From IMG/VR virus record IMGVR_UViG_3300035698_035310, positions 1 through 64,000 of that record: a DNA stretch of 64,000 nt; one strand, given 5' to 3'. The notes beneath the pieces were generated by a model, which worked only from the letters and a program-made list of their open reading frames with translations, ran no database searches and was not told where the DNA came from. Shown here in pieces: positions 1,618 through 44,974 of the stretch. The translations under genes and the position numbers were made by a program. Each line of letters starts with the position of its first letter. Within the stretch, counting starts at the first letter, position 1.

Positions 1618-3735
1618 ATGACTAGAATGACAGACCTAAATCGATATAGGAATATCGGCATCGTCGCACACGTCGATGCAGGAAAAACAACAACAACAGA
1701 ACGTATTCTATATTATACTGGTAAAAATCATAAAATAGGTGAGGTGCATGATGGCGAGTCTAAAATGGATCACATGCCGCAGGAATCTGAGCGCGGTATT
1801 ACCATCACTAGTGCTGCTACTACAGTGTTTTGGAATAATCATCGTATTAACATTATTGATACTCCAGGACATGTTGATTTTACTATTGAAGTCAATCGTA
1901 GTTTACGTGTTTTGGACGGTGCGGTGGTTGTATTTGATGCTGTTGCAGGCGTTGAACCTCAATCAGAAACAAATTGGAGATTAGCGGATCAATATAATGT
2001 CCCGCGTATGTGTTTTGTCAACAAAATGGATCGCGATGGTGCAAACTATATTCGTTGTATTACCATGATTAGAGAACGTCTTGGCGCTAAACCGCTTGTG
2101 ACGCAATTGCCTATTGGTTCTTATGAAAAATTTGCTGGCATCGTGAACCTAGTTAAAATGGAAGCATATATCTATAATTCCGAAGACTTGGGAACAGATT
2201 GGGAAACCTATGATGCTGGATCAGATGAATTTGCTGCGGTTGTAGCAAAAATGGACTTACTTCCAGAAGACCAAGTGTTGATGGATTCTATTGCTGATTA
2301 TCGTGAACAACTTCTTGAAGAAGCGGCTTCCGTTGATGAAAAAGCATTGGAAAAATATTTTGAAAATATGGACTTGGATCATGATACACTTATTGCATGT
2401 TTGCGTAAGGGCACGATTGATGGCGACTTTGTTCCTATCCTTTGTGGTTCCGCATTTAAGAACAAAGGTGTTCAGCCATTATTGGATGCAGTTATTGATT
2501 ATATGCCAGCCCCAACAGATGTTGAATCTATTAACACATTGGATGATGATGGTGAAATCAATGGTGATCGTAAATCACGCGATGATGAACCGTTTTCTGC
2601 ACTTGTGTTTAAGGTGGTTAATAATCAATATGGTGAACTTTCATATGCACGTGTATATTCTGGTTTTATTGCCAAGGGGACAAGTGTATTAAATTCAACT
2701 GTTGGAAAAACAGAACGAGTTGGTCGATTGGTTGAAATGCACGCTAATGACATGAATCCGTTGACGGAATGTTATGCTGGCGATATTATTGCTTTTGTTG
2801 GATTGAAAAATGCAACAACCGGTGATACGTTGTGTGCAGTTAATAAACCATGTACGCTAGAGCGTATGGTTTTCCCTGATCCTGTTATCGATATTGCGGT
2901 TGAACCAAAAACAAAAGCCGACCAAGAGAAATTGGGCGTAGCGCTTAGTAAAATGGTCAAAGAAGACCCGTCTTTGCATCTTAAAACAGATGAAGAAACC
3001 GGACAGGTTGTTCTTTCTGGTATGGGCGAATTGCATCTTGAAATCATCATTGACCGCATTCAGCGTGAATATGGCGTCGAAGCAAACATTGGTGCACCAC
3101 AAGTTGCTTACCGTGAGACTATCACTGATACTATCACGCACGTGCAGACACACAAAAAACAAACTGGTGGGTCTGGACAGTTTGCCGAGATCAAGGTAAT
3201 TCTTTCGCCACAAGAACAAGGCGAGGGATTCTTATTTGAAAACACGATTTCTGGTGGTAATGTTCCTAAAGAATATATACCATCAGTAGAACATGGTTTT
3301 AAAATGGCTGCTAATGGTGGTATTCGCGCAGGATATCCTTGTGTTGATTTCAAAGTTACGTTAACCGATGGTAAATATCACGACGTTGATTCTAGCACCA
3401 TGGCTTTCGAAACCTGTGCAGGAGCAGCGTTCCGTGAAGGTATGAAGAAAGCAGGACCGGTCATTCTAGAGCCTGTGATGAAAATCGAAGTTATCACACC
3501 AGATGAATATACTGGCGATGTTATTGGCGATTTGATGCGCAGACGTGGTATGGTTTCTGGACAAGAAATGAGAGCGAATGCAGTTGTTATTAATGCAAGT
3601 GCACCATTGTCAGAAATGTTTGGATACATGACTACATTGCGTTCTATGACTTCTGGACGTGGCACCTTCGCTATGGAACTTGAGAAATACGCAGAACTAC
3701 CAAAGAGTCTTGCTGAAGCAATGGAGATTGATTAA
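1618..3735 (+). CDS. fusA: Elongation factor G
   Basis: [49 protein letters not shown]; full length 705 aa. Confidence 0.98.
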
Positions 3736-5981: not shown

Positions 5982-7241
5982 ATGACGGATAATGATGCGA
6001 ATGTTAAATGTTCTTTTTGTGAAAAAACAAAAGAAGACGTAAAAAAAATAATAGCAGGACACAGTGTTTATATATGCGATGAATGTGTAGACGTTTGTCA
6101 TCAGATAATATTAGAGGATGTCGTTCCTTCTGTTAAGTTGGACGGATCGGTTCCAAGCCCAAGACAAATTAAAGAGTTCTTGGATATGTACGTTATTGCG
6201 CAAGATTATGCTAAAACTGTATTAGCGGTGGCGGTACACAATCATTATAAGCGGCTAGAACATCCGGTTATTGATGATGTGGAAATCCAAAAAAGTAATG
6301 TTTTACTTATCGGACCAACTGGTTGTGGTAAAACATTACTGGCGCAAACTATATCACGCATGTTAGATGTACCATTTGCTATGGCGGATGCAACAAGTTT
6401 AACCGAGGCTGGATATGTTGGCGATGATGTAGAAAATATAATTGTGAAATTATATCAATCTGCTGATGGAGATATTGAGAAGACACAGCGTGGGATTGTA
6501 TATATCGATGAAATCGATAAACTTTCCCGACGCGGTGATTCAGCAAGCATTACACGCGATGTTGGCGGTGAAGGTGTCCAGCAAGCAATTCTTAAAGTTA
6601 TTGAAGGAACTGTTTGTAGAATTCCACCAGAAGGTGGAAGAAAGCACCCGAATCAAGAAATGGTAGAAATCGATACTACAAATATATTGTTTATTTTGGG
6701 TGGTGCATTTGTAGGATTGGATAAATTAATAGAAAGTCGTTCAAATGATGGAGTAAATATTGGCTTTGGTGCTGATGTTAAAGAAGTTCAAACAACTCAT
6801 AAAGATTTGAGCCATTTCTTAGAAGATATACAATCAACCGATTTACATAAGTTTGGCATGATACCGGAATTTGTTGGCAGAGCGCCAGTTCGTGCACCAT
6901 TGCGCGAATTGACTGAACCACAATTGGTATTAGTTCAACAAGAACCAAAAAATGCGATAACGCGCCAGTTTATAAAAATGTTTAGTTTAGAAAATATTGA
7001 ATTGGAATTCAGTGATGATGCATTGAAGTCTATTGCTAAAATGTGTATCGAAGATGGAACAGGTGCCCGTGGACTTAGAAGTATATATGAAAAACGATTA
7101 TTGCAAGTTCAATATGATCTACCAGAATTATCACAAAAAGGGTTAGAAAAAATAATTATCACCAATGAATTCATCAATGGTGATACTGATACCCCTATTA
7201 TGGTTTATGATACTAACACGCAGGATCAACCCGCCAATTAA
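5982..7241 (+). CDS. clpX: ATP-dependent Clp protease ATP-binding subunit ClpX
   Basis: CSFC...CDEC zinc finger, GPTGCGKT, DEIDK, RKHP, GARGL. Confidence 0.97.
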   Translation: MTDNDANVKCSFCEKTKEDVKKIIAGHSVYICDECVDVCHQIILEDVVPSVKLDGSVPSPRQIKEFLDMYVIAQDYAKTVLAVAVHNHYKRLEHPVIDDVEIQKSNVLLIGPTGCGKTLLAQTISRMLDVPFAMADATSLTEAGYVGDDVENIIVKLYQSADGDIEKTQRGIVYIDEIDKLSRRGDSASITRDVGGEGVQQAILKVIEGTVCRIPPEGGRKHPNQEMVEIDTTNILFILGGAFVGLDKLIESRSNDGVNIGFGADVKEVQTTHKDLSHFLEDIQSTDLHKFGMIPEFVGRAPVRAPLRELTEPQLVLVQQEPKNAITRQFIKMFSLENIELEFSDDALKSIAKMCIEDGTGARGLRSIYEKRLLQVQYDLPELSQKGLEKIIITNEFINGDTDTPIMVYDTNTQDQPAN

Positions 7242-11153: not shown

Positions 11154-11192
11154 TATATGATAAAAAATAAATGACATACAGGAGACCAAACC

Positions 11193-11945
11193 ATGTCAAA
11201 ATTTAACAACGCTGGCGTTGCACCAATCAATGTAACTACAATTCCAAATACACGCACCAAAGAAGGTTCACGATCATTTAAGTTTGATCATAAAATGGAA
11301 CTATATCAAACGGTAGTTACTACACTGTTTGGTGAAAGTAATTTTTATGAAAGCAAAGATGAACGCACCAGTCGTATTACACGTCTTGTTCGCAAGTGTG
11401 TAGAAGGCGGCGATGCACAATATGTTGCTAACCTTGCAGTATATGCTCGTGAGAAAATGTATCTTCGTTCTATTCCTGTATTTTTAACCGTTACACTTGC
11501 AAAAGAAATTCGCGCAGTTGATAGTTCCGACTACAACGTTCGATTATTGACAGGTCGTGTTATTCAACGTGCAGATGAAATTCGTGAAATGTTCGCTGCT
11601 GCGGAAGCAGTATTTGGTAATTCAAAGGATAATAAAACATTTAAGAAAGTTGTACCACGTGCGCTTCTTAAAGGTATCGCTGATTCGTTTAATAAATTTG
11701 ACGCTTACCAATTCAAAAAATGGTCCGGTGGAAAAGGTTCAATTAAATTCACCGACGTAATGCGCGTTGTTCATCCAACACCAAAGGATGAAGCACAGAA
11801 CGCAATCTTTAAGAACATCATGGAAGACACCTTGCCAGCAATCGATACTTGGGAAACCAATATCTCTGGTGATGGTTCTAATACAGAAAACTGGCAGTTA
11901 GTTGCTGATGCCAAAATAGAAAAAACTGCTTGGATTAGGGTATAA
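11193..11945 (+). CDS. rsr: TROVE/Ro60 RNA-binding protein, N-terminal half
   Basis: FGESNFYE, YAREKMYLRSIP, QRADEI, FDAYQFKKW, DVMRVVHPTP, TWET. Confidence 0.88.
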   Translation: MSKFNNAGVAPINVTTIPNTRTKEGSRSFKFDHKMELYQTVVTTLFGESNFYESKDERTSRITRLVRKCVEGGDAQYVANLAVYAREKMYLRSIPVFLTVTLAKEIRAVDSSDYNVRLLTGRVIQRADEIREMFAAAEAVFGNSKDNKTFKKVVPRALLKGIADSFNKFDAYQFKKWSGGKGSIKFTDVMRVVHPTPKDEAQNAIFKNIMEDTLPAIDTWETNISGDGSNTENWQLVADAKIEKTAWIRV

Positions 11946-11964
11946 TCAGTTATATTTTTGTTTC

Positions 11965-12016
11965 TTTACTGCTTTATTGATAAATAGATATAACAGGTTA
12001 TCATAAAGGCGGTAAA
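11965..12016 (+). promoter_or_regulatory. Late promoter GATAAATA (11979-11986) with RBS-sequestering hairpin for the endonuclease
   Basis: tttactgctttattgataa / ttatcataaaggcggtaaa; same logic as T4 I-TevI control. Confidence 0.7.
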
Positions 12017-12019
12017 AAC

Positions 12020-12973
12020 ATGAAGACAATAAAAGAATGGATTGAATGCAATCTTATAAAAGAAAATGGTTCATTGAATGAACGACGAATGGGAAAGTTG
12101 TCCAAAAAAGATAGTAGAACGTGGGTGGAAAAACATCATATCGATAGATTTGATGTTATAATAAAATGGGGAAATGGAAGGTCGTTTAAAGAATGCGTCT
12201 ATATGATATTACAAAATATAATAAACATACCATCATGTAAGATATGTGATAATGATGTAGCATTTATAGATAATAAAAATGGTTATAGATTATATTGTTC
12301 AACTGTATGTATGAATAATGACCCAGAAAGAATAATAGAAATAGAAAAAACTAAAAGATCAAATGGTTCATATGATCAAAAAAGAAAACGATTAGAAGAA
12401 ACTAATATAAAAAAATATGGAAAACCGTTTTTTGTTAATAGAAAAAAAGGAAAAGACACATTAAGAAAAAACTTTGGCGTTGATCATCCGGCACAATCGT
12501 CTATCGTTAAAAAGAAAATGAAAGATACAATGGTTAAAAAATGGGGCGTAGAAAATCCCATGTATATATCAACTTTTGTTGATAAAATGATACAAAGTAG
12601 AGGAAATAAAATAACCGGAAGTATCAGGTGTAGAATAAAACGATTTGGTGATAAAGAGATTCCATATCAAGGAACATATGAAAAAATATTTTTAGAAAGT
12701 TTATCGAATAAAAATATCGAACGAATAAAAAGAGGTAATAAAGCAGTTTATTTTATAGACGGGAAACAAAAAACATATTATCCAGATTTTGTTATAGAAA
12801 ACACAGTTTATGAAATAAAATCGAAATGGACGTGGGATAATAAAGGTAAGAATAAAAGATTAAGAGTAATAAACAAGTTGAAGTTGAGATCGGCTAAACG
12901 GCAAGGTCATAATGTCATTTTGGTATTAGATCATAAACAGTTAACTTACAACGAAGCAATACGCTTGTTATAA
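12020..12973 (+). mobile_element. Free-standing homing endonuclease (PD-(D/E)XK, TnsA-like C-terminus) inserted in the TROVE gene
   Basis: CKIC, YCSTVC, KKWGVENP-type repeats, YYPDFVIENTVYEIKS. Confidence 0.8.
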
Positions 12974-12987
12974 AGGAGACCAAACCA

Positions 12988-13983
12988 ATGCAAGTTATAG
13001 ATAAGAAATTTTTAAAAGATAAAGATAATGTTGTATTCACAGATGAATTTGATATTATTAATGGTGTAAAATACCAAAAAGTTAAATGGGATATAGAGCA
13101 TCCAAAAATGGGTCTGATGGCAAGAGTTCGAAATCTTCGTAATTTAACCAAGCATGATGTTGATTTGGATTACACTATAAAATGTTTGACTGATGCTAAC
13201 GCAGTCAAAAAATCAAAGATGCTCCCGTTTCGCTGGTATTCGGCGTATAGAGAACTTGGTGGTTCTGGAATAGAAGCAAACAATCATTGGTATTATAAAG
13301 AACCAGCTAAACCAGACGTTATGGCTTCACCACATTTGTTGGCTGCATTGGAAGATGCATTTGACATGAGTGTATCCAATTTGCCAGACTTGGGCGATGA
13401 TGTACTTATCGTAGTTGACCAAAGTGGTTCTATGTAAGACACTATCAGCCAACATAGCACAGTAACATGTGCTGAAATCGCTAGTGTGCTTGGTGCTGCG
13501 GTGTGGTTCAATCAGATTCGCCAAGGTAAAAAAGCTATGGTAGCAGGTTTTGCATCCACTGGAAAGGTTTACAATTGGAGTGCACGAACTAGTGCGCTTG
13601 CTGCGGCTAAAGAAATGATGAACACCAGTTTGGGTGGTGCAACGAATATCGGCACTGCGTGGGGTGCTGCAAAAATGGCTAATCTTAAACCATCAACTAT
13701 TGTGGTTCTTAGTGATATGCAAATGACTGGCGATAGCCGCGCTCGTTATAATACAATTATGGTTCCAGAGCAATACGGTCTTGCTGATGATGACACTTTG
13801 AAAATAAGTATCAACATTAAAGGTTATGATAATAGCCCGTTGGCTATGAACAATGGCTGGATTCAAATTGCTGGATGGTCAGAAAAAATATTTGATCTTA
13901 TTGACGCAATGCGCAAACCAGGTGATGCTGTTAAGTTGATTAATGATCTTGATTTAAACTTGACAAAGTCGCAACAGGTATAG
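12988..13983 (+). pseudogene. rsr: TROVE/Ro60 C-terminal half incl. vWA domain, with in-frame TAA at 13435-13437
   Basis: KMGLMARVRNLRNL, SKMLPFRWYSAY, VDQSGSM*DTISQHSTVTCAEIASVLGAA, GGATNI, LSDMQ, GWSEKIF. Confidence 0.8.
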
Positions 13984-14019: not shown

Positions 14020-14538
14020 TTGTTGAACAATAATACTACTTTGCTTAATGAGCAAATAAATTTACATTTGATTCGTTTAGTCAGTGATGACGGTGAACAG
14101 GATGGAATAATGACATCCAGTGCAGCGTATACTATAGCGCAATCGAAAGGATTGGATTTAGTTTTAATATCACCCGAAGCAATTCCACCTGTATGTAAGG
14201 TGCTTAATTGGGGCAAACATTTATTTGATTTAAAGAAACGACAAAAAGAATCTAAATCAAAACAAACCGTAGTTGATACAAAAGAAGTTCAATTAAGACC
14301 AACTACTGATGTTCATGATTTGGAAACAAAAATGAATAAAGCAAAGAAGTTTTTAGAGAAAGGCAAACATGTTCGTTTTCATATGCGTTTCCGTGGACGA
14401 GAAGCATCACATGCTGAAATAGGCATGGAAATGATGAATGGCATCCTTGAAACGTTAGGAGATACTGTTGTTATTGACAAGAAACCCATATTAAAAGGTA
14501 AGAATATCATAATGTTAGTGGCTCCAGCGACTAAATAG
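14020..14538 (+). CDS. infC: Translation initiation factor IF-3 (TTG start)
   Basis: LNEQI, GLDLVLISP...PPVCKV, VKEVQLRP-like segment, FLEKG, FRGRE. Confidence 0.95.
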   Translation: MLNNNTTLLNEQINLHLIRLVSDDGEQDGIMTSSAAYTIAQSKGLDLVLISPEAIPPVCKVLNWGKHLFDLKKRQKESKSKQTVVDTKEVQLRPTTDVHDLETKMNKAKKFLEKGKHVRFHMRFRGREASHAEIGMEMMNGILETLGDTVVIDKKPILKGKNIIMLVAPATK

Positions 14539-17996: not shown

Positions 17997-18400
17997 ATAT
18001 TGTATGGTGTAGTGGTAACACGCTGCCTTTATCGGCGGAGCCGTGGGTTCGAGTCCTACTATGATATTTGGATTACGTTCAGTGTGCACACCGAACGCCA
18101 CAAATTATCTGTTATTATCGCGATAGTGATAGATAATGTTGGGTCACTTAGTTATGATTAAAGTTTTTAGGGTGTTCGTCTAGTGGATTAGGACGCGCCG
18201 CCTTGGGTAGTTGGAGTTCGATTCTCCTTAGCAACGGTTACGTAAATCCGCACGGTGAGACATTGGTTCGAATCCAATACATGTTAAAATAACGATTTCA
18301 CATGAGATGTATAGTTTTAATGGATAAATCAGGCATGAGCCTTGTGCGGCAAGATAGTGGGTTCGATTCCCCTTGCGTTGAATGTGAAATGATGCTATAT
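17997..18400 (+). ncRNA. Degenerate tRNA-like elements (17997-18068, ~18169-18285, ~18295-18390)
   Basis: Four GGTTCGA/GAGTTCGA T-arms and D-arm-like segments but defective anticodon or acceptor arms. Confidence 0.55.
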
Positions 18401-20518: not shown

Positions 20519-20594
20519 GCCGTATTAGTGACACTGGCTAACACGCCTGTTTTGTAATCAGGAAAATGGGGATCGATACCTCAATATGGCACCA
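20519..20594 (+). tRNA. tRNA-Thr(TGT)
   Basis: cctgt-ttTGTaa-tcagg; CCA. Confidence 0.8.
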
Positions 20595-28368: not shown

Positions 28369-28446
28369 TGACTAGTAGCTCAGTGGTTTAGAGCGGGGAG
28401 TTCTAAACTCTCGACAGCGTTGGTTCAAATCCAACCTGGTCAACCA
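28369..28446 (+). tRNA. Amber suppressor tRNA (CTA)
   Basis: gggag-ttCTAaa-ctctc; intact cloverleaf; ACCA. Confidence 0.85.
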
Positions 28447-34931: not shown

Positions 34932-35039
34932 TTCCAAGTAGCTCAGATGGTAGAGCGTCTGACTGTGGAACAGATGAGCCTAAAGCTTTGAAGTTCAAAT
35001 TTAATCAGAATGTCGGCGGTTCGATCCCGTCCTTGGAAG
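34932..35039 (+). tRNA. tRNA-Asn(GTT) body with 35-nt insertion in the anticodon
   Basis: tctga-ctGT[insert]Taa-tcaga; U1:A72, G73; no encoded CCA. Confidence 0.75.
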
Positions 35040-35178
35040 CAAATAAAAGTTTTAGGTCGTTCAATAAGCCATGTTTAGCGGCATGGTTAGGACAAGCGGG
35101 TATAACCGCTAAATGGTATGCTGCAATCGGGGTTAACACTTATTGCAACGAGGTGAAAATCCACCCATAGAAATCAAT

Positions 35179-35270
35179 GCCTCGGTAGCTCAGAAAAGCA
35201 ACGTAAGTTGTAGTGTAGTAGCAGGTGACTGAACCTCACCGTGTCGGTAGTTCGAATCTATCCTGGGGCA
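35179..35270 (+). tRNA. tRNA-Phe(GAA) with hairpin insertion in the D loop
   Basis: ggtga-ctGAAcc-tcacc; caac-gtaa-gttg in D loop; no CCA. Confidence 0.65.
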
Positions 35271-43159: not shown

Positions 43160-44974
43160 ATGATTACAAAAACAAACAAACTGCTAATTTGTAAAGCTGG
43201 TGAAGTAGTGACTATTCAGGGTTGGGTTCATAGAACACGCGACCATGGCGGACTTACTTTCATCGATTTCCGCGATTATGAAGGATTGGTGCAGTGTGTT
43301 TTTGACAATTATGGTGGTACGGTTGATTATCATCATTTGCGGGATGAGTCTGTCGTCCGAATGACTGGTGCTGTCAGATTGCGACCAACGGGAACGGAAA
43401 ATCCTAACTTGCGTACAGGCGACATTGAGATTGAAGTTAGTGAGATAGAAATATTGAACGGCGCGGATGTGTTGCCATTTAAGGTGTTTGCTGAAGAAGA
43501 AGAATATACGCCGTCTTTGGAACAACGATTAAAATATCGTTATTTGGACTTGCGTCGTGATGAAAATCAAAAAATGTTGAAGTTGCGGTCTGATGTTCAG
43601 CATTTTATCAGAAACTACATGCATGATCAAGAATTCATAGAAGTTCAAACGCCTACCTTATCGTCGACGTCACCAGAAGGAGCAAGAGATTTTTTGATTC
43701 CGAGCAGAATACACAAAGGTCAAGTATATTCATTAATTCAATCACCACAAATTCAAAAACAATTGCTAATGGCGAGCGGTGTAGAAAAATACTATCAATT
43801 ATGTCGCTGTTGGCGCGATGAGGCGTCACGTTCTGATCGCGCACTTGAATTTACACAGTTGGATTTAGAAATTGGATTTGGCACACAAGAAATGGTGTTT
43901 AGTTTAGTTGAACCATTGTTGACAGAGATGTTTGAATCATATGGACTAGGATGGAAGTTGAATCAATCACCGAGATATGATGATGGCGATCATGGATTTG
44001 TGAGAATACCATATAAAGAATCAATTGAAAAATATGGCACGGATAAACCCGATCTACGGGCGAGTCTTGAAATGACCGATGTGACTATTTTATTCAAGAA
44101 GCAAGGGCCGCAATTCATTGTGGATGCTGTTGAATCAGGACAAATAGTTAAAGCAATACATCTTACGGATGCAGATGGATTAAGTGGTAAATTCTACAAA
44201 GATATTGAAAAATATGCTCAAGAGTTGGGTATGCCGGGATTGGGATATGTCAAATCTGGTTTCAGTGTAGATAATGGCGGAAACCCCGGACCATTGGCTA
44301 AAATGATGAATGCTGGACAATTGACGCAGTTAAGATCAATAGTTGGGTTTAATCCTTTATCTAGTGACACACAGGCAACCTTCCTTATGGTTGGGCATCC
44401 TAAAGCAGTAAACGCATGGGGTGCCGATTTACGGGTTGAGTTATCCAAGCGAACCAAAAACTTTGATGAAGAATCTTATGAGTTTTGTTGGATTGTAGAT
44501 TTTCCATTTTTTGAAGAAAATGAAGAAACGGGAAAGATTGATTTCTCGCATAATCCATTTAGTATGCCAAAAGGTGGCATGGAAGCATTGGAAAATAAAA
44601 ATCTGTTGGATATTTTAGCTTGTCAGTATGACACGGTTCTGAACGGAATGGAAATTAACAGTGGTGGCGAACGAAACTATAATCCAGAAATTATGAAAAA
44701 AGTTTTTGAAATAGTCGGATATGATGAATCGGTAGTTGAAGAAAAGTTTCCTTCGTTGTGGGGGGCGATGAAACTTGGTCATCCCCCTTGCGCTGGTTGT
44801 GCACCGGGTATAGACCGATTGATACAATTATTGATGTTTAAAGATGGTGGGCATATAAGAGATGTGACGGCATTTCCAATAGGTTCAAATGGGATTGATT
44901 TATTAATGGGGGCACCATCTGTGCCATCGGATGAACAAATTAAAGAGTTGGGTATTAAATTTCAGAAGAAATGA
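43160..44974 (+). CDS. aspS: Aspartyl-tRNA synthetase (bacterial GAD-domain type, probably non-discriminating)
   Basis: RDHGGLTFIDFRD, RLKYRYLDLRR, TPEGARDF, QSPQ..KQLLM, WRDE, HNPFSMP, APGIDRL. Confidence 0.97.
   Translation: MITKTNKLLICKAGEVVTIQGWVHRTRDHGGLTFIDFRDYEGLVQCVFDNYGGTVDYHHLRDESVVRMTGAVRLRPTGTENPNLRTGDIEIEVSEIEILNGADVLPFKVFAEEEEYTPSLEQRLKYRYLDLRRDENQKMLKLRSDVQHFIRNYMHDQEFIEVQTPTLSSTSPEGARDFLIPSRIHKGQVYSLIQSPQIQKQLLMASGVEKYYQLCRCWRDEASRSDRALEFTQLDLEIGFGTQEMVFSLVEPLLTEMFESYGLGWKLNQSPRYDDGDHGFVRIPYKESIEKYGTDKPDLRASLEMTDVTILFKKQGPQFIVDAVESGQIVKAIHLTDADGLSGKFYKDIEKYAQELGMPGLGYVKSGFSVDNGGNPGPLAKMMNAGQLTQLRSIVGFNPLSSDTQATFLMVGHPKAVNAWGADLRVELSKRTKNFDEESYEFCWIVDFPFFEENEETGKIDFSHNPFSMPKGGMEALENKNLLDILACQYDTVLNGMEINSGGERNYNPEIMKKVFEIVGYDESVVEEKFPSLWGAMKLGHPPCAGCAPGIDRLIQLLMFKDGGHIRDVTAFPIGSNGIDLLMGAPSVPSDEQIKELGIKFQKK

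What the first reader, a model, noticed from the sequence alone, without database searches (positions are those of the whole stretch)
11181..13983. Ro60 gene split by a free-standing endonuclease that supplies a copy of the gene's own translation start
Seen: TROVE homology stops after WQLVAD and resumes at PKMGLMARVRNLRNL. The upstream contexts of both halves share ggagaccaaacc (11181-11192 and 12976-12987) directly before the ATG. The halves gained short foreign extensions (11 aa C-terminal, ~38 aa N-terminal). No room or motifs for a group I intron or intein. Established: Aeromonas phage Aeh1 nrdA is split by mobE and works as two polypeptides. Inference: a two-chain Ro60 ring. The extra TAA at 13435 would remove most of the vWA domain unless read through.
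Basis: partly seen in the sequence, partly recalled or inferred. Interest (0 to 1): 0.7.

Follow-up and report, generated by a model that had tools for sequence, protein, structure and literature searches.

The report
Endonuclease-split Ro60 gene in a phage
In this giant salt-lake phage a selfish endonuclease gene has cut the Ro60 (RNA quality-control ring protein) gene in two, an arrangement many other phages also carry and seem to tolerate; this copy also has a recent premature stop codon in its second half.

Summary
The Ro60/TROVE gene is in three same-strand pieces: N (11193-11945), C1 (12988-13437) and C2 (13438-13983). A 317-aa endonuclease ORF (12020-12973) lies between N and C1.

- **The break.** It falls in a five-residue loop between two helices. 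An intact, syntenic relative (528 aa) is continuous there.
- **No splicing element.** No intron or intein signature was found.
- **Not a one-off.** At least ten metagenomic phage lineages split Ro60 at the same loop. They share a short N-piece tail, W-[IV]-[EKR]-[VY]. Those with the same endonuclease family also share a ~38-aa leader on the C piece. The gap holds three different endonuclease families, or nothing. C pieces seen whole are intact, and replacement changes are far rarer than silent ones. A second loop is split in other lineages.
- **Duplicated start region.** The 17/18-nt repeat is real and its 12-nt core is unique in the 359-kb genome. Which copy is the original is unresolved.
- **The TAA.** TAA at 13435 replaces CAA (Gln) of the intact relative. 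It is reproduced in independent assemblies of two runs, and no standard ochre-suppressor tRNA exists. This copy probably makes a C piece that lacks the vWA domain.

It is a new member of the known "genes in pieces" kind (phage Aeh1 nrdA/mobE). Assembly of the halves is inferred, not shown.

The parts
11176..11193 (+). Translation-initiation repeat, copy 1 (ATACAGGAGACCAAACC + A of the ATG), directly before the N piece's ATG
   Evidence: The intact relative L022 has AAAAGGAGACTTAAA before its ATG.
11193..11945 (+). Ro60 N piece, 250 aa plus TAA. Residues 1-239 are TROVE helical repeats.
   Evidence: Pfam TROVE 21.2 bits, below the cut-off of 23. 76% identical to residues 1-242 of intact P0122, dN/dS 0.09. 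Alignment.
11910..11942 (+). N-piece tail AKIEKTAWIRV. It ends in the conserved W-[IV]-[EKR]-[VY] motif of site-B splits.
   Evidence: Tails of P0002, P0008, P0016, P0049, P0070, P0075, P0088, L023 and L024. The codons differ synonymously between loci.
11946..12019 (+). Spacer before the endonuclease gene. A hairpin covers the endonuclease's SD-like AAAGGCGG. GATAAATA (11979-11986) resembles a T4-type late promoter.
   Evidence: Fold z = -2.68, with 4 of 200 shuffles as good. An ATAAATA-like motif (ATAAGTA in L017) stands before the endonuclease start in all five aligned cassettes. Such hairpins are described for gene-fracturing endonucleases (PMC2677866, section 14). Weak evidence.
12020..12973 (+). 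Free-standing endonuclease gene, 317 aa. It has an N-terminal four-Cys zinc finger, DUF7487 'KYGV..P.Q' repeats, and a C-terminal PD-(D/E)XK nuclease domain (residues ~202-317; D256, E265, K267).
   Evidence: Pfam DUF7487 E 6.9e-13. phrog_3339 'homing endonuclease' E 1.5e-15. Family alignment. Model pLDDT 83. VIA Z 8.3 to TnsA, 6.8 to Vsr, 5.8 to I-Bth0305I. Homologs of 38-40% identity sit at the same place in Ro60 genes of L023 and L024.
12970..12987 (+). Translation-initiation repeat, copy 2 (ATAAAGGAGACCAAACCA). It overlaps the endonuclease's TAA stop and lies just before C1's ATG.
12988..13437 (+). Ro60 C1 piece, 149 aa plus TAA. It holds the rest of the TROVE ring plus the first strand and the DxSGS metal-site motif of the vWA domain.
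   Evidence: Pfam TROVE 26.9 bits, above the cut-off. phrog_850. 61% identical to P0122 residues 245-352.
12988..13101 (+). 38-aa N-terminal leader of C1, a conserved element of this cassette family (consensus MNIVT..FL.KQ.NV..HDEF...NGKKYQKV.YG)
   Evidence: Alignments A2 and A3 with P0125, P0126, P0172, P0173, P0177, P0184 and L017. 61% aa identity between L023 and L024 with silent sites saturated. Low GC.
13435..13437 (+). In-frame TAA, one residue after the DQSGSM motif. The intact relative has CAA (Gln) here, and L014 has AGT (Ser).
   Evidence: Other homologs have Q, E or C at the aligned position. Reproduced in two runs' contigs. Corresponds to residue 353 of the P0122 model.
13438..13983 (+). 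Ro60 C2 piece: 181 open codons plus TAG, the remainder of the vWA domain. It has no convincing start of its own: GTG at 13486 has no SD, and ATG at 13537 has a weak AAGG.
   Evidence: phrog_850 E 3e-13. 72% identical to P0122 residues 356-527, dN 0.19, as for the N piece. Start-codon survey.

Best explanation
This is a Ro60 (TROVE + vWA) gene of a 359-kb phage, fractured by a free-standing homing-type endonuclease cassette.

The cassette is about 1.19 kb (11910-13101). It sits in the short loop between two helices of the ring (site B). It carries four things:
- a short peptide tail and stop codon for the upstream half;
- a spacer with a hairpin and a late-promoter-like motif;
- the endonuclease gene (zinc finger, DUF7487 repeats, PD-(D/E)XK nuclease);
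- a Shine-Dalgarno sequence, an ATG and a 38-aa leader for the downstream half.

The mRNA is not spliced and the protein is not ligated. The halves are translated separately and, as in the many other phages with this split, are expected to re-form the ring without a covalent bond. The conserved tail and leader probably help that assembly, as shown for the tails of Aeh1 NrdA-a/NrdA-b.

In this genome the two halves' initiation regions have been made identical by a local copying event, which would tend to equalise their translation.

In addition, a recent CAA-to-TAA mutation ends the downstream half after the DxSGS motif. This phage probably makes N (250 aa) plus a 149-aa C1 without most of the vWA domain. 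The locus is therefore likely impaired or newly inactivated.

Shown: the anatomy, the homologies, the recurrence and the selection signal. Inferred: separate translation, assembly, the role of the tails, endonuclease activity, and the consequence of the TAA.
For: - Break point and intact allele. The P0122 model (pLDDT 89) puts site B in loop 241-245 between helices 232-240 and 246-251. That model matches Ro60 structures over its full length (9l5y Thermus phage Ro60 E 1.8e-16; 1yvp TM 0.71).
- Synteny: IF3 lies downstream in the window and in L021/L022; ClpX lies upstream in the window and in L014.
- Endonuclease identity.
- Foreign composition of 11900-13100.
- No intron or intein.
- Recurrence of the same architecture: L016, L017/L018, L023 and L024 hold N, then a DUF7487-type endonuclease (Pfam match faint or below threshold in L017; L016's ORF is cut by the contig end), then C. 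L019/L020 hold a Vsr-like endonuclease, L027 an HNH_3 endonuclease, and L026 none.
- Intact C pieces: 281-335 aa wherever the whole piece is seen.
- Conserved tail and leader.
- Selection: silent sites are saturated while pN is 0.2-0.3 in cassette-bearing pairs, the leader included.
- Patchy distribution: cassette-bearing genes are scattered on the Ro60 tree (at least 4 changes forced by starred branches). The window is sister to the unsplit P0122 (support 93; the clade that also holds L014 is starred at 97).
- Repeat.
- TAA. No tRNA with anticodon UUA. No sign of general TAA or TAG read-through.
- Precedent for tails as assembly domains: PMC3045599.
Against: - No expression or protein data exist. 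No RNA run was listed.
- The complex prediction gave no answer.
- The window's tail is the most divergent of the family: WIRV preceded by seven extra residues.
- C1 has diverged more than N or C2 (61% against 76% and 72% identity; dN/dS 0.22 against 0.09).
- The TAA means this copy may not be functional at all, so 'how it works' rests largely on relatives.
- Endonuclease activity and homing are inferred from fold, motif and patchy distribution only.
- The order of events is not settled. The split may have come first and the endonucleases later (L026).
Confidence: 0.7

Rival explanations
1. Dead gene: the endonuclease insertion itself inactivated Ro60, and the pieces are decaying relics. The TAA is simply the first visible further lesion.
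For: - In-frame TAA.
- C1 is more diverged than the other pieces.
- N-piece Pfam score is below the cut-off.
- No support from the complex prediction, which counts neither for nor against.
Against: - There are no frameshifts and no other stops in 580 codons of a 36%-GC genome.
- C2 is as conserved as N against the intact relative (72% and 76%).
- The same split is kept in at least ten lineages, with C pieces intact wherever seen whole, saturated silent sites and low pN.
- L026 keeps the split as two overlapping genes with no endonuclease.
- The tail and leader are conserved at the peptide level.
Confidence: 0.1
2. The TAA is bypassed: read-through by an unusual tRNA, or re-initiation downstream. 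The phage would then still make a full C piece (~331 aa) or a third chain, and a working Ro60.
For: - C2 shows no decay.
- The TAA allele is the consensus in two runs.
- A tRNA-like gene 4.5 kb downstream (17997-18068) has a six-base anticodon loop TTTATC that contains TTA, the complement of TAA.
- Most relatives have Q or E at this position.
- In-frame GTG at 13486 and ATG at 13537 exist.
Against: - TAA is the genome's main stop: 197 of 301 long ORFs.
- There is no canonical tRNA(UUA).
- A six-base loop is not a known decoding geometry.
- No other gene was found that needs TAA read-through.
- The candidate restart codons lack a good SD and would cut into the first helix of the vWA domain.
Confidence: 0.12
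3. The insert is removed by splicing, either RNA (group I or II intron carrying the endonuclease ORF) or protein (a split or degenerate intein whose remnants are the tail and leader), so a single Ro60 chain is restored.
For: - About 238 nt of the insert lie outside the ORF, roughly the size of a small group I core.
- By eye the leader resembles the C-terminal part of split inteins, and the tail's GW[VI]E[V] resembles the end of an intein N-part (compare P0294 and P0295 in L025).
- PMC3045599 raises a degenerate-intein origin for the Aeh1 tails.
Against: - An Rfam scan at E up to 10 over 11700-13600 found no intron family.
- There is no Hint or intein Pfam hit.
- NCBIfam intein_Cterm hits the true intein control (E 1.6e-7) but none of seven leaders.
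- Profile comparison with a true intein C-part gave probability 0.2%.
- The tail is 6-11 aa with no Cys or Ser at its first position. The leader has no terminal Asn and no conserved Cys/Ser/Thr after it.
- Both pieces have their own stop, SD and ATG.
Confidence: 0.03
4. Order of events reversed. Ro60 first underwent a simple fission at this loop (stop overlapping start, as in L026). The junction between the two new genes then became a landing site that several endonuclease families colonised and exchanged. The tail belongs to the fission, not to any endonuclease.
For: - The same W[IV][EK][VY] tail occurs with three unrelated endonuclease families and with none.
- In L026 the tail's codons (GGAGGTG) form the SD of the C piece.
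- Free-standing endonuclease genes typically sit between genes (PMC3045599 discussion).
Against: - The window's nearest relatives are unsplit at this loop (P0122, L014), so the split state must have been transferred or lost repeatedly.
- The low-GC block covers tail to leader as one unit.
- L006, a close relative of L019, looks like endonuclease loss by deletion. L026 may likewise be secondary.
Confidence: 0.25

Closest known systems
Aeromonas phage Aeh1 nrdA-a / mobE / nrdA-b ('genes in pieces'; Friedrich et al. 2007, cited from my own knowledge; Crona et al. 2010, PMC3045599)
   Same: - A free-standing endonuclease gene splits a conserved gene.
- There is no RNA or protein splicing.
- The halves carry short non-homologous C- and N-terminal tails that arose with the insertion.
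- An RNA hairpin lies over the endonuclease's start.
- The halves are translated separately.
   Different: - The host gene is Ro60, not ribonucleotide reductase.
- The endonuclease is a zinc-finger/DUF7487/PD-(D/E)XK protein, not HNH MobE.
- The split is not unique to one phage. It recurs in many lineages with conserved tails, which Crona et al. expected to be undetectable by similarity.
- Here the endonuclease and the downstream half do not overlap, and the two halves share an identical initiation region.
- Function of the split protein is untested here.
- This copy carries an extra nonsense codon.
'Fractured genes': split intein plus free-standing endonuclease between the halves (Dassa et al. 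2009, PMC2677866)
   Same: - The layout is the same: half, endonuclease ORF, half.
- It occurs mainly in phages.
- Hairpins and a TATAAATA-like motif lie upstream of the endonuclease.
- The endonuclease's 3' end overlaps the start of the downstream half in most relatives of this locus.
- PD-(D/E)XK (Vsr-like) endonucleases are involved (L019 here).
   Different: No split intein is present: no N-part with Cys1 and block B, and no C-part ending in Asn plus a nucleophile. Dassa et al. did note one intein-less case (sbcD).
Phage T4 topoisomerase genes 39 and 60 separated by mobA (cited in PMC3045599)
   Same: A gene is split by an endonuclease gene, and the products have tail-like extensions.
   Different: Different host gene and endonuclease. 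T4 gene 60 also uses ribosomal bypass, for which there is no sign here.
Ro60 / Rsr ring proteins (Xenopus 1yvp, Deinococcus 2nvo, Thermus phage phiLo 9l5y)
   Same: The intact relative's model matches them over the full length. The window's pieces align collinearly with it, and the DxSGS...T...D metal-site residues are kept.
   Different: All solved Ro60 proteins are single chains. Here there are two or three ORFs. No Y RNA family was detected nearby.

Membership tests
Gene fractured by a free-standing homing endonuclease (Aeh1 nrdA/mobE type) | The host gene is continuous in relatives and is interrupted at one point, with no loss of homologous sequence | tested here: met
   P0122/L022 is continuous across ENWQQVAD-SETTG-YMAKLRN. 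The window's pieces cover both sides with at most 1-2 residues unaccounted for.
Gene fractured by a free-standing homing endonuclease (Aeh1 nrdA/mobE type) | The intervening ORF is an endonuclease of a homing-type family with its catalytic residues intact | tested here: met
   phrog_3339 E 1.5e-15. PD-(D/E)XK fold: Z 8.3 to TnsA, 6.8 to Vsr, 5.8 to I-Bth0305I. D256, E265 and four Cys are nearly invariant in the family, and K267 lies in the conserved EIKS motif. Foldseek alone gave no hit below E 0.1, so the fold call rests on VIA Z-scores of 6-8 plus the motif.
Gene fractured by a free-standing homing endonuclease (Aeh1 nrdA/mobE type) | Each half has its own stop or start and a ribosome-binding site, and no splicing element is present | tested here: met
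   TAA at 11943. AGGAG six to eight nt before both ATGs. No intron or intein.
Gene fractured by a free-standing homing endonuclease (Aeh1 nrdA/mobE type) | The halves are expressed and assemble into a working protein | not testable with these tools
   No RNA run was listed. The complex prediction gave no answer. Only indirect support exists: conservation of the split state.
Gene fractured by a free-standing homing endonuclease (Aeh1 nrdA/mobE type) | The endonuclease cuts the uninterrupted allele and drives its own spread | not testable with these tools
   Only a patchy distribution on the Ro60 tree supports this: at least 4 changes, and the window's nearest relative is unsplit.
Split-intein 'fractured gene' | An intein N-part (Cys/Ser1, blocks A and B) at the end of the upstream half, and an intein C-part ending in Asn plus Cys/Ser/Thr at the start of the downstream half | tested here: not met
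   The tail is 6-11 aa beginning with A, F, I, M, T, N or E. The leader gives no intein_Cterm hit while the control gives E 1.6e-7. hhalign probability 0.2%. The PDB profile search finds no intein.
Group I or group II intron carrying an endonuclease ORF | A conserved catalytic RNA core flanking the ORF | tested here: not met
   cmscan at E up to 10 over 11700-13600 gave one chance miRNA hit only. The ORF could hide a core split by a long loop, so this is not absolute.
Ro60 / TROVE-vWA protein | A TROVE helical-repeat ring followed by a vWA domain with the metal-site motif, in one chain | tested here: inconclusive
   Domains and motif residues are all present and collinear. They are spread over three ORFs, and a TAA separates the DxSGS motif from the rest of the vWA domain.
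Stop-codon recoding (TAA read as an amino acid) | The stop is depleted as a terminator, a matching suppressor tRNA exists, and many genes carry the stop in frame | tested here: not met
   TAA ends 197 of 301 long ORFs. There is no tRNA(UUA). The 35 same-frame ORF pairs separated by TAA are mostly explained by a start codon shortly after the stop, many with an SD-like motif. The odd six-base-loop tRNA remains unexplained.

The most novel reading that the evidence does not exclude
The site-B split of Ro60 is a portable 'cut-and-glue' module. The junction carries a conserved C-terminal tail (W-[IV]-[EKR]-[VY]). In the DUF7487 cassettes it also carries a conserved ~38-aa leader. Together they would hold the two halves of the ring non-covalently. 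The module could then move between very different Ro60 genes, and different endonuclease families could swap in and out of the gap without harm to the host gene. In this phage the halves are additionally tuned to equal translation by a duplicated initiation region. If true, it would be the first natural family of conserved assembly tags spread by a homing element.
Probability: 0.25. Interest if true: 0.7.

Novelty: new member of a known kind. Interest (0 to 1): 0.5.

Why it matters
Only one endonuclease-fractured gene without splicing has been studied biochemically: Aeh1 NrdA. Its authors predicted that similar assembly tails would exist elsewhere but could not be found by similarity.

Here a second host protein shows the same solution. 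It is a closed RNA-binding ring, and it is split in many lineages at two loops. The tails are conserved enough to align. That gives natural sequence variation with which to test whether such tails are assembly devices.

It also gives a natural pair of split points for Ro60, useful for engineering split versions of the ring. And it shows that phage Ro60 genes are a recurrent target of at least three or four endonuclease families.

For annotation, phage 'TROVE' ORFs of about 180-250 aa and 280-335 aa should be read as halves of one protein, not as fragments or errors.

Tried and rejected
- **Complex prediction.** N + C1 with my own alignments gave ipSAE 0.01, 'no answer'. It is evidence neither for nor against binding.
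- **Nucleotide search.** Megablast of the locus and of 24 kb of the window against the phage collection found no match.
- **Leader-only protein search.** Residues 1-45 of P0125 found only itself, because of word-index limits. Uninformative.
- **Leader profile against PDB sequences.** Only chance-level hits (E 0.49 and 8) and no intein.
- **Intein-remnant idea.** It was raised by eye from L025's true split intein. It is not supported by hhalign or NCBIfam.
- **Intron.** None in Rfam at E up to 10.
- **Y RNA near the gene.** None at gathering threshold or at E up to 1.
- **RNA-seq runs.** None was listed. The four DNA runs laid (of eight listed) show only the endonuclease-bearing allele, and X3/X4 have no piece over 13435.
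- **TAA or TAG recoding.** Not supported. The 35 TAA-separated and the three TAG-separated same-frame ORF pairs that could be read look like neighbouring genes.
- **Promoter and terminator scan.** Hits are at chance level, and there is no + strand terminator between the pieces.
- **dN/dS.** Silent sites are saturated in most comparisons. Only pN well below pS can be stated, not reliable ratios.
Full report
**Context.** The window is the first 64 kb of a single 359,044-bp contig with 36% GC. Public runs that hold it are labelled salt lake metagenome. It encodes EF-G, ClpX, IF3, an aspartyl-tRNA synthetase and about 30 tRNAs. It is therefore a huge phage with many translation genes. No near-identical record was visible in the phage collection.

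**The observation.**
- Four same-strand ORFs lie at 11193-11945 (250 aa), 12020-12973 (317 aa), 12988-13437 (149 aa) and 13486-13983. The open frame after the TAA at 13435 runs from 13438, in the same frame as C1.
- The first and third ORFs hit Pfam TROVE. The third and fourth hit phrog_850, 'RNA-binding protein', at consecutive profile positions.
- Aligned with full-length homologs, the N piece is homologous up to ...ENWQLVAD. C1 is homologous from PKMGLMARVRNLRN onward.
- The 12-mer GGAGACCAAACC lies before both ATGs, at 11181-11192 and 12975-12986. It extends to 17 of 18 nt and occurs nowhere else in the genome.
- Logan contigs of two runs reproduce the whole 3.6-kb stretch with no differing letters at word depth 32 and 14. 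Low-coverage pieces from two further runs cover both insert junctions.

**An intact allele exists.**
- The representative-library search with C1 found P0122, a 528-aa single-chain protein. It is 76%, 61% and 72% identical to N, C1 and C2.
- Its contigs L021 and L022 have IF3 directly downstream, as in the window.
- It reads ENWQQVAD-SETTG-YMAKLRNLRN with no interruption, and has CAA (Gln) where the window has TAA.
- An AlphaFold model of P0122 (pLDDT 89, pTM 0.90) matches solved Ro60 proteins over its full length: Thermus phage Ro60 9l5y, Xenopus 1yvp, Deinococcus 2nvo.
- In that model the window's break falls in the five-residue loop 241-245, between helices 232-240 and 246-251. The TAA corresponds to residue 353, one residue after the DxSGSM metal-site motif of the vWA domain.

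**The inserted gene.**
- The 317-aa ORF matches DUF7487 (E 6.9e-13) and phrog_3339 'homing endonuclease' (E 1.5e-15).
- Its family alignment shows four nearly invariant cysteines, repeated KYGV..P.Q units, and a C-terminal Y.PDF...EIKS block in which the Asp and Glu are nearly invariant.
- The model (pLDDT 83) has a C-terminal alpha/beta domain at residues 202-317. Its best structural matches are all PD-(D/E)XK nucleases: TnsA Z 8.3, Vsr 6.8, Hjc 6.1, and the homing endonuclease I-Bth0305I 5.8. Foldseek alone was not significant.
- GC drops to 22-33% from about 11900 to 13100, against 38-46% in the flanking Ro60 sequence. The tail and the 38-aa leader therefore belong compositionally to the insert.
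- The 74-nt spacer before the endonuclease folds into a hairpin over its SD-like sequence (z = -2.7). It contains GATAAATA, and an ATAAATA-like motif is present before the endonuclease start in all five aligned cassettes. This resembles the hairpin and late-promoter arrangement described for gene-fracturing endonucleases (PMC2677866). The evidence here is weak.

**No splicing element.**
- An Rfam scan at E up to 10 over 11700-13600 found no intron family.
- No Hint or intein domain is seen.
- I noticed by eye that the leader and tail resemble the C-part, and the end of the N-part, of a real split intein found in L025. The tests do not support this. NCBIfam intein_Cterm hits that control at E 1.6e-7 but none of seven leaders. 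Profile comparison gave probability 0.2%.
- The catalytic first residue, block B, the terminal Asn and the +1 nucleophile are all absent.

**The split is a family trait, not an accident of this genome.**
- A length-limited protein search with the N piece returned many proteins that stop at the same place. They end in a similar short tail...FEGWIEVE...FEGWVEVK...NEGWVKVN...MWIEVGR...MWVEVEG...TWIKVLN and ...NWIEYE. The window has ...KTAWIRV.
- Their contigs show the same layout.
  - L017/L018, L023 and L024 carry N, then a DUF7487/PD-(D/E)XK endonuclease (38-40% identical to the window's in L023 and L024), then C. L016 shows N and the start of such an endonuclease before its contig ends.
  - L019/L020 carry a different endonuclease, with a zinc finger, NUMOD3 and a Vsr-like motif.
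  - L027 carries an HNH_3 endonuclease.
  - L026 has no endonuclease at all. The N stop overlaps the C start (ATGA).
- C pieces that are seen whole are intact, at 281-335 aa.
- The C pieces that accompany the DUF7487 endonuclease share a conserved ~38-aa leader with the window (alignments A2 and A3).
- The tail's codons differ synonymously between loci. In cassette-bearing pairs silent sites are saturated while pN is 0.2-0.3, the leader included. So the peptides, not just the DNA, are under constraint.
- On a tree of Ro60 C-terminal regions the cassette-bearing genes are scattered: at least four changes are forced by well-supported branches. The window groups with the unsplit P0122 (support 93) and with L014 (clade support 97). 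This fits transfer or repeated loss of the split state.
- A second loop (site A, after KFD.YQ..KY; loop 178-186 of the model) is split in other lineages.
  - L014, among the window's closest relatives, has an HNH endonuclease there and ClpX upstream as in the window.
  - L011 has only about 146 nt between the halves.
  - A dozen 161-187-aa proteins end there.

**The duplicated initiation region.**
- In related cassettes the C piece's SD lies inside the endonuclease's last codons, and its ATG overlaps the endonuclease's stop (AAAGGAGTTACAACCATGA in L023).
- The window instead has the endonuclease's TAA, then AGGAGACCAAACCA, then ATG.
- The N piece's own region (ACAGGAGACCAAACC ATG) is clearly related to that of the intact relative (AAAAGGAGACTTAAA ATG). 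The C1 copy also resembles the cassette family's spacer.
- Eight identical spacer bases beyond the SD are far beyond chance: about 3e-5 from base composition, by my own arithmetic. A copying or conversion event therefore happened in this lineage, but its direction cannot be decided.
- L014 also has similar initiation regions on its two halves (AAAGAAGGAGA), though that sequence is too generic to weigh much.
- Equalised translation of the two halves is a reasonable functional reading. It is an inference.

**The TAA.**
- It is a single C-to-T difference from the relative's CAA.
- C2 shows no decay: 181 open codons, and dN 0.19, as for N. The change is therefore recent, or C2 is still used.
- The genome uses TAA as its main terminator and has no tRNA with anticodon UUA, with or without introns.
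- A survey of same-frame ORF pairs found no other case that needs read-through of TAA or TAG.
- Candidate restart codons are poor.
- One loose end remains. A tRNA-like gene at 17997-18068 has a six-base anticodon loop TTTATC that contains TTA. Whether it could read TAA is unknown.
- My estimate: about 0.75 that C2 is not made in useful amounts, about 0.12 that it is rescued, and the rest for error or polymorphism.

**Verdict.**
- The locus is a new member of the known 'genes in pieces' kind created by free-standing homing endonucleases. Its closest match is Aeh1 nrdA/mobE, whose insertion-derived tails are essential for assembly (PMC3045599).
- It is not a split-intein fractured gene (PMC2677866) and not an intron.
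It recurs at two loops, carries conserved tails, and hosts several exchangeable endonuclease families.
- The limit on this particular copy is the recent nonsense codon. I found no paper describing split Ro60 genes or DUF7487 in the searchable library.

Noticed in passing
window 17997-18068: A tRNA-like gene (Rfam tRNA 46.9 bits; ARAGORN 'tRNA-???') has a six-base anticodon loop TTTATC between stem CTGCC/GGCGG. The loop contains TTA, the complement of the ochre codon.
   Followed up: partly
window 20519-20591, 34932-35040, 35179-35270, 18169-18286: These further unusual tRNA-like genes were found by Rfam but mostly missed by ARAGORN. One has a nine-base anticodon loop (TTTTGTAAT). One is a tRNA-His with a 17-nt insertion after the anticodon. 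One is a 92-nt element. One is a 118-nt element with two T-arm-like motifs.
   Followed up: partly
window 28369-28446 and genome 221822-221895: Two tRNAs carry anticodon CTA (amber suppressors). Yet TAG still ends 34 of 301 long ORFs, and the three TAG-separated same-frame ORF pairs that could be read (of four) look like neighbouring genes, so no TAG recoding was seen.
   Followed up: partly
window 1618-3735, 5982-7241, 14020-14538, 43160-44974: The phage encodes EF-G, ClpX, IF3 (apparent TTG start) and an aspartyl-tRNA synthetase. This is an unusually rich translation and proteostasis set around the tRNA cluster.
   Followed up: no
L026:3001-4544: Ro60 is split at the same loop with no endonuclease. 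The N piece ends ...MWVEVEG and its stop overlaps the C piece's ATG. The tail's codons GGAGGTG form the C piece's Shine-Dalgarno sequence.
   Followed up: partly
L011:1350-3166 and L014:2073-4128: A second recurrent split site lies after KFD.YQ..KY. L014 has an HNH endonuclease in the gap. L011 has only about 146 nt and no ORF. About a dozen 161-187-aa proteins end at this point.
   Followed up: partly
L006:5989-7567: This close relative of L019 (84% and 71% aa identity) has no endonuclease. About 17 codons around the split are missing, and the two halves overlap out of frame by 47 nt. It may be endonuclease loss by deletion, a frameshifted gene, or an assembly error.
   Followed up: no
L025:1-2244 (minus strand): Beside a DUF7487 endonuclease homolog lies a textbook fractured gene. 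It has an N half ending in an intein N-part, an MTES_1575-type ORF, and a C half beginning with an intein C-part (...VHN|S).
   Followed up: no
genome 112924-113598 (outside the window): A distant paralog of the endonuclease is present elsewhere in the same genome (tblastn E 1e-4, 26% identity over 183 aa). What it sits in was not examined.
   Followed up: no
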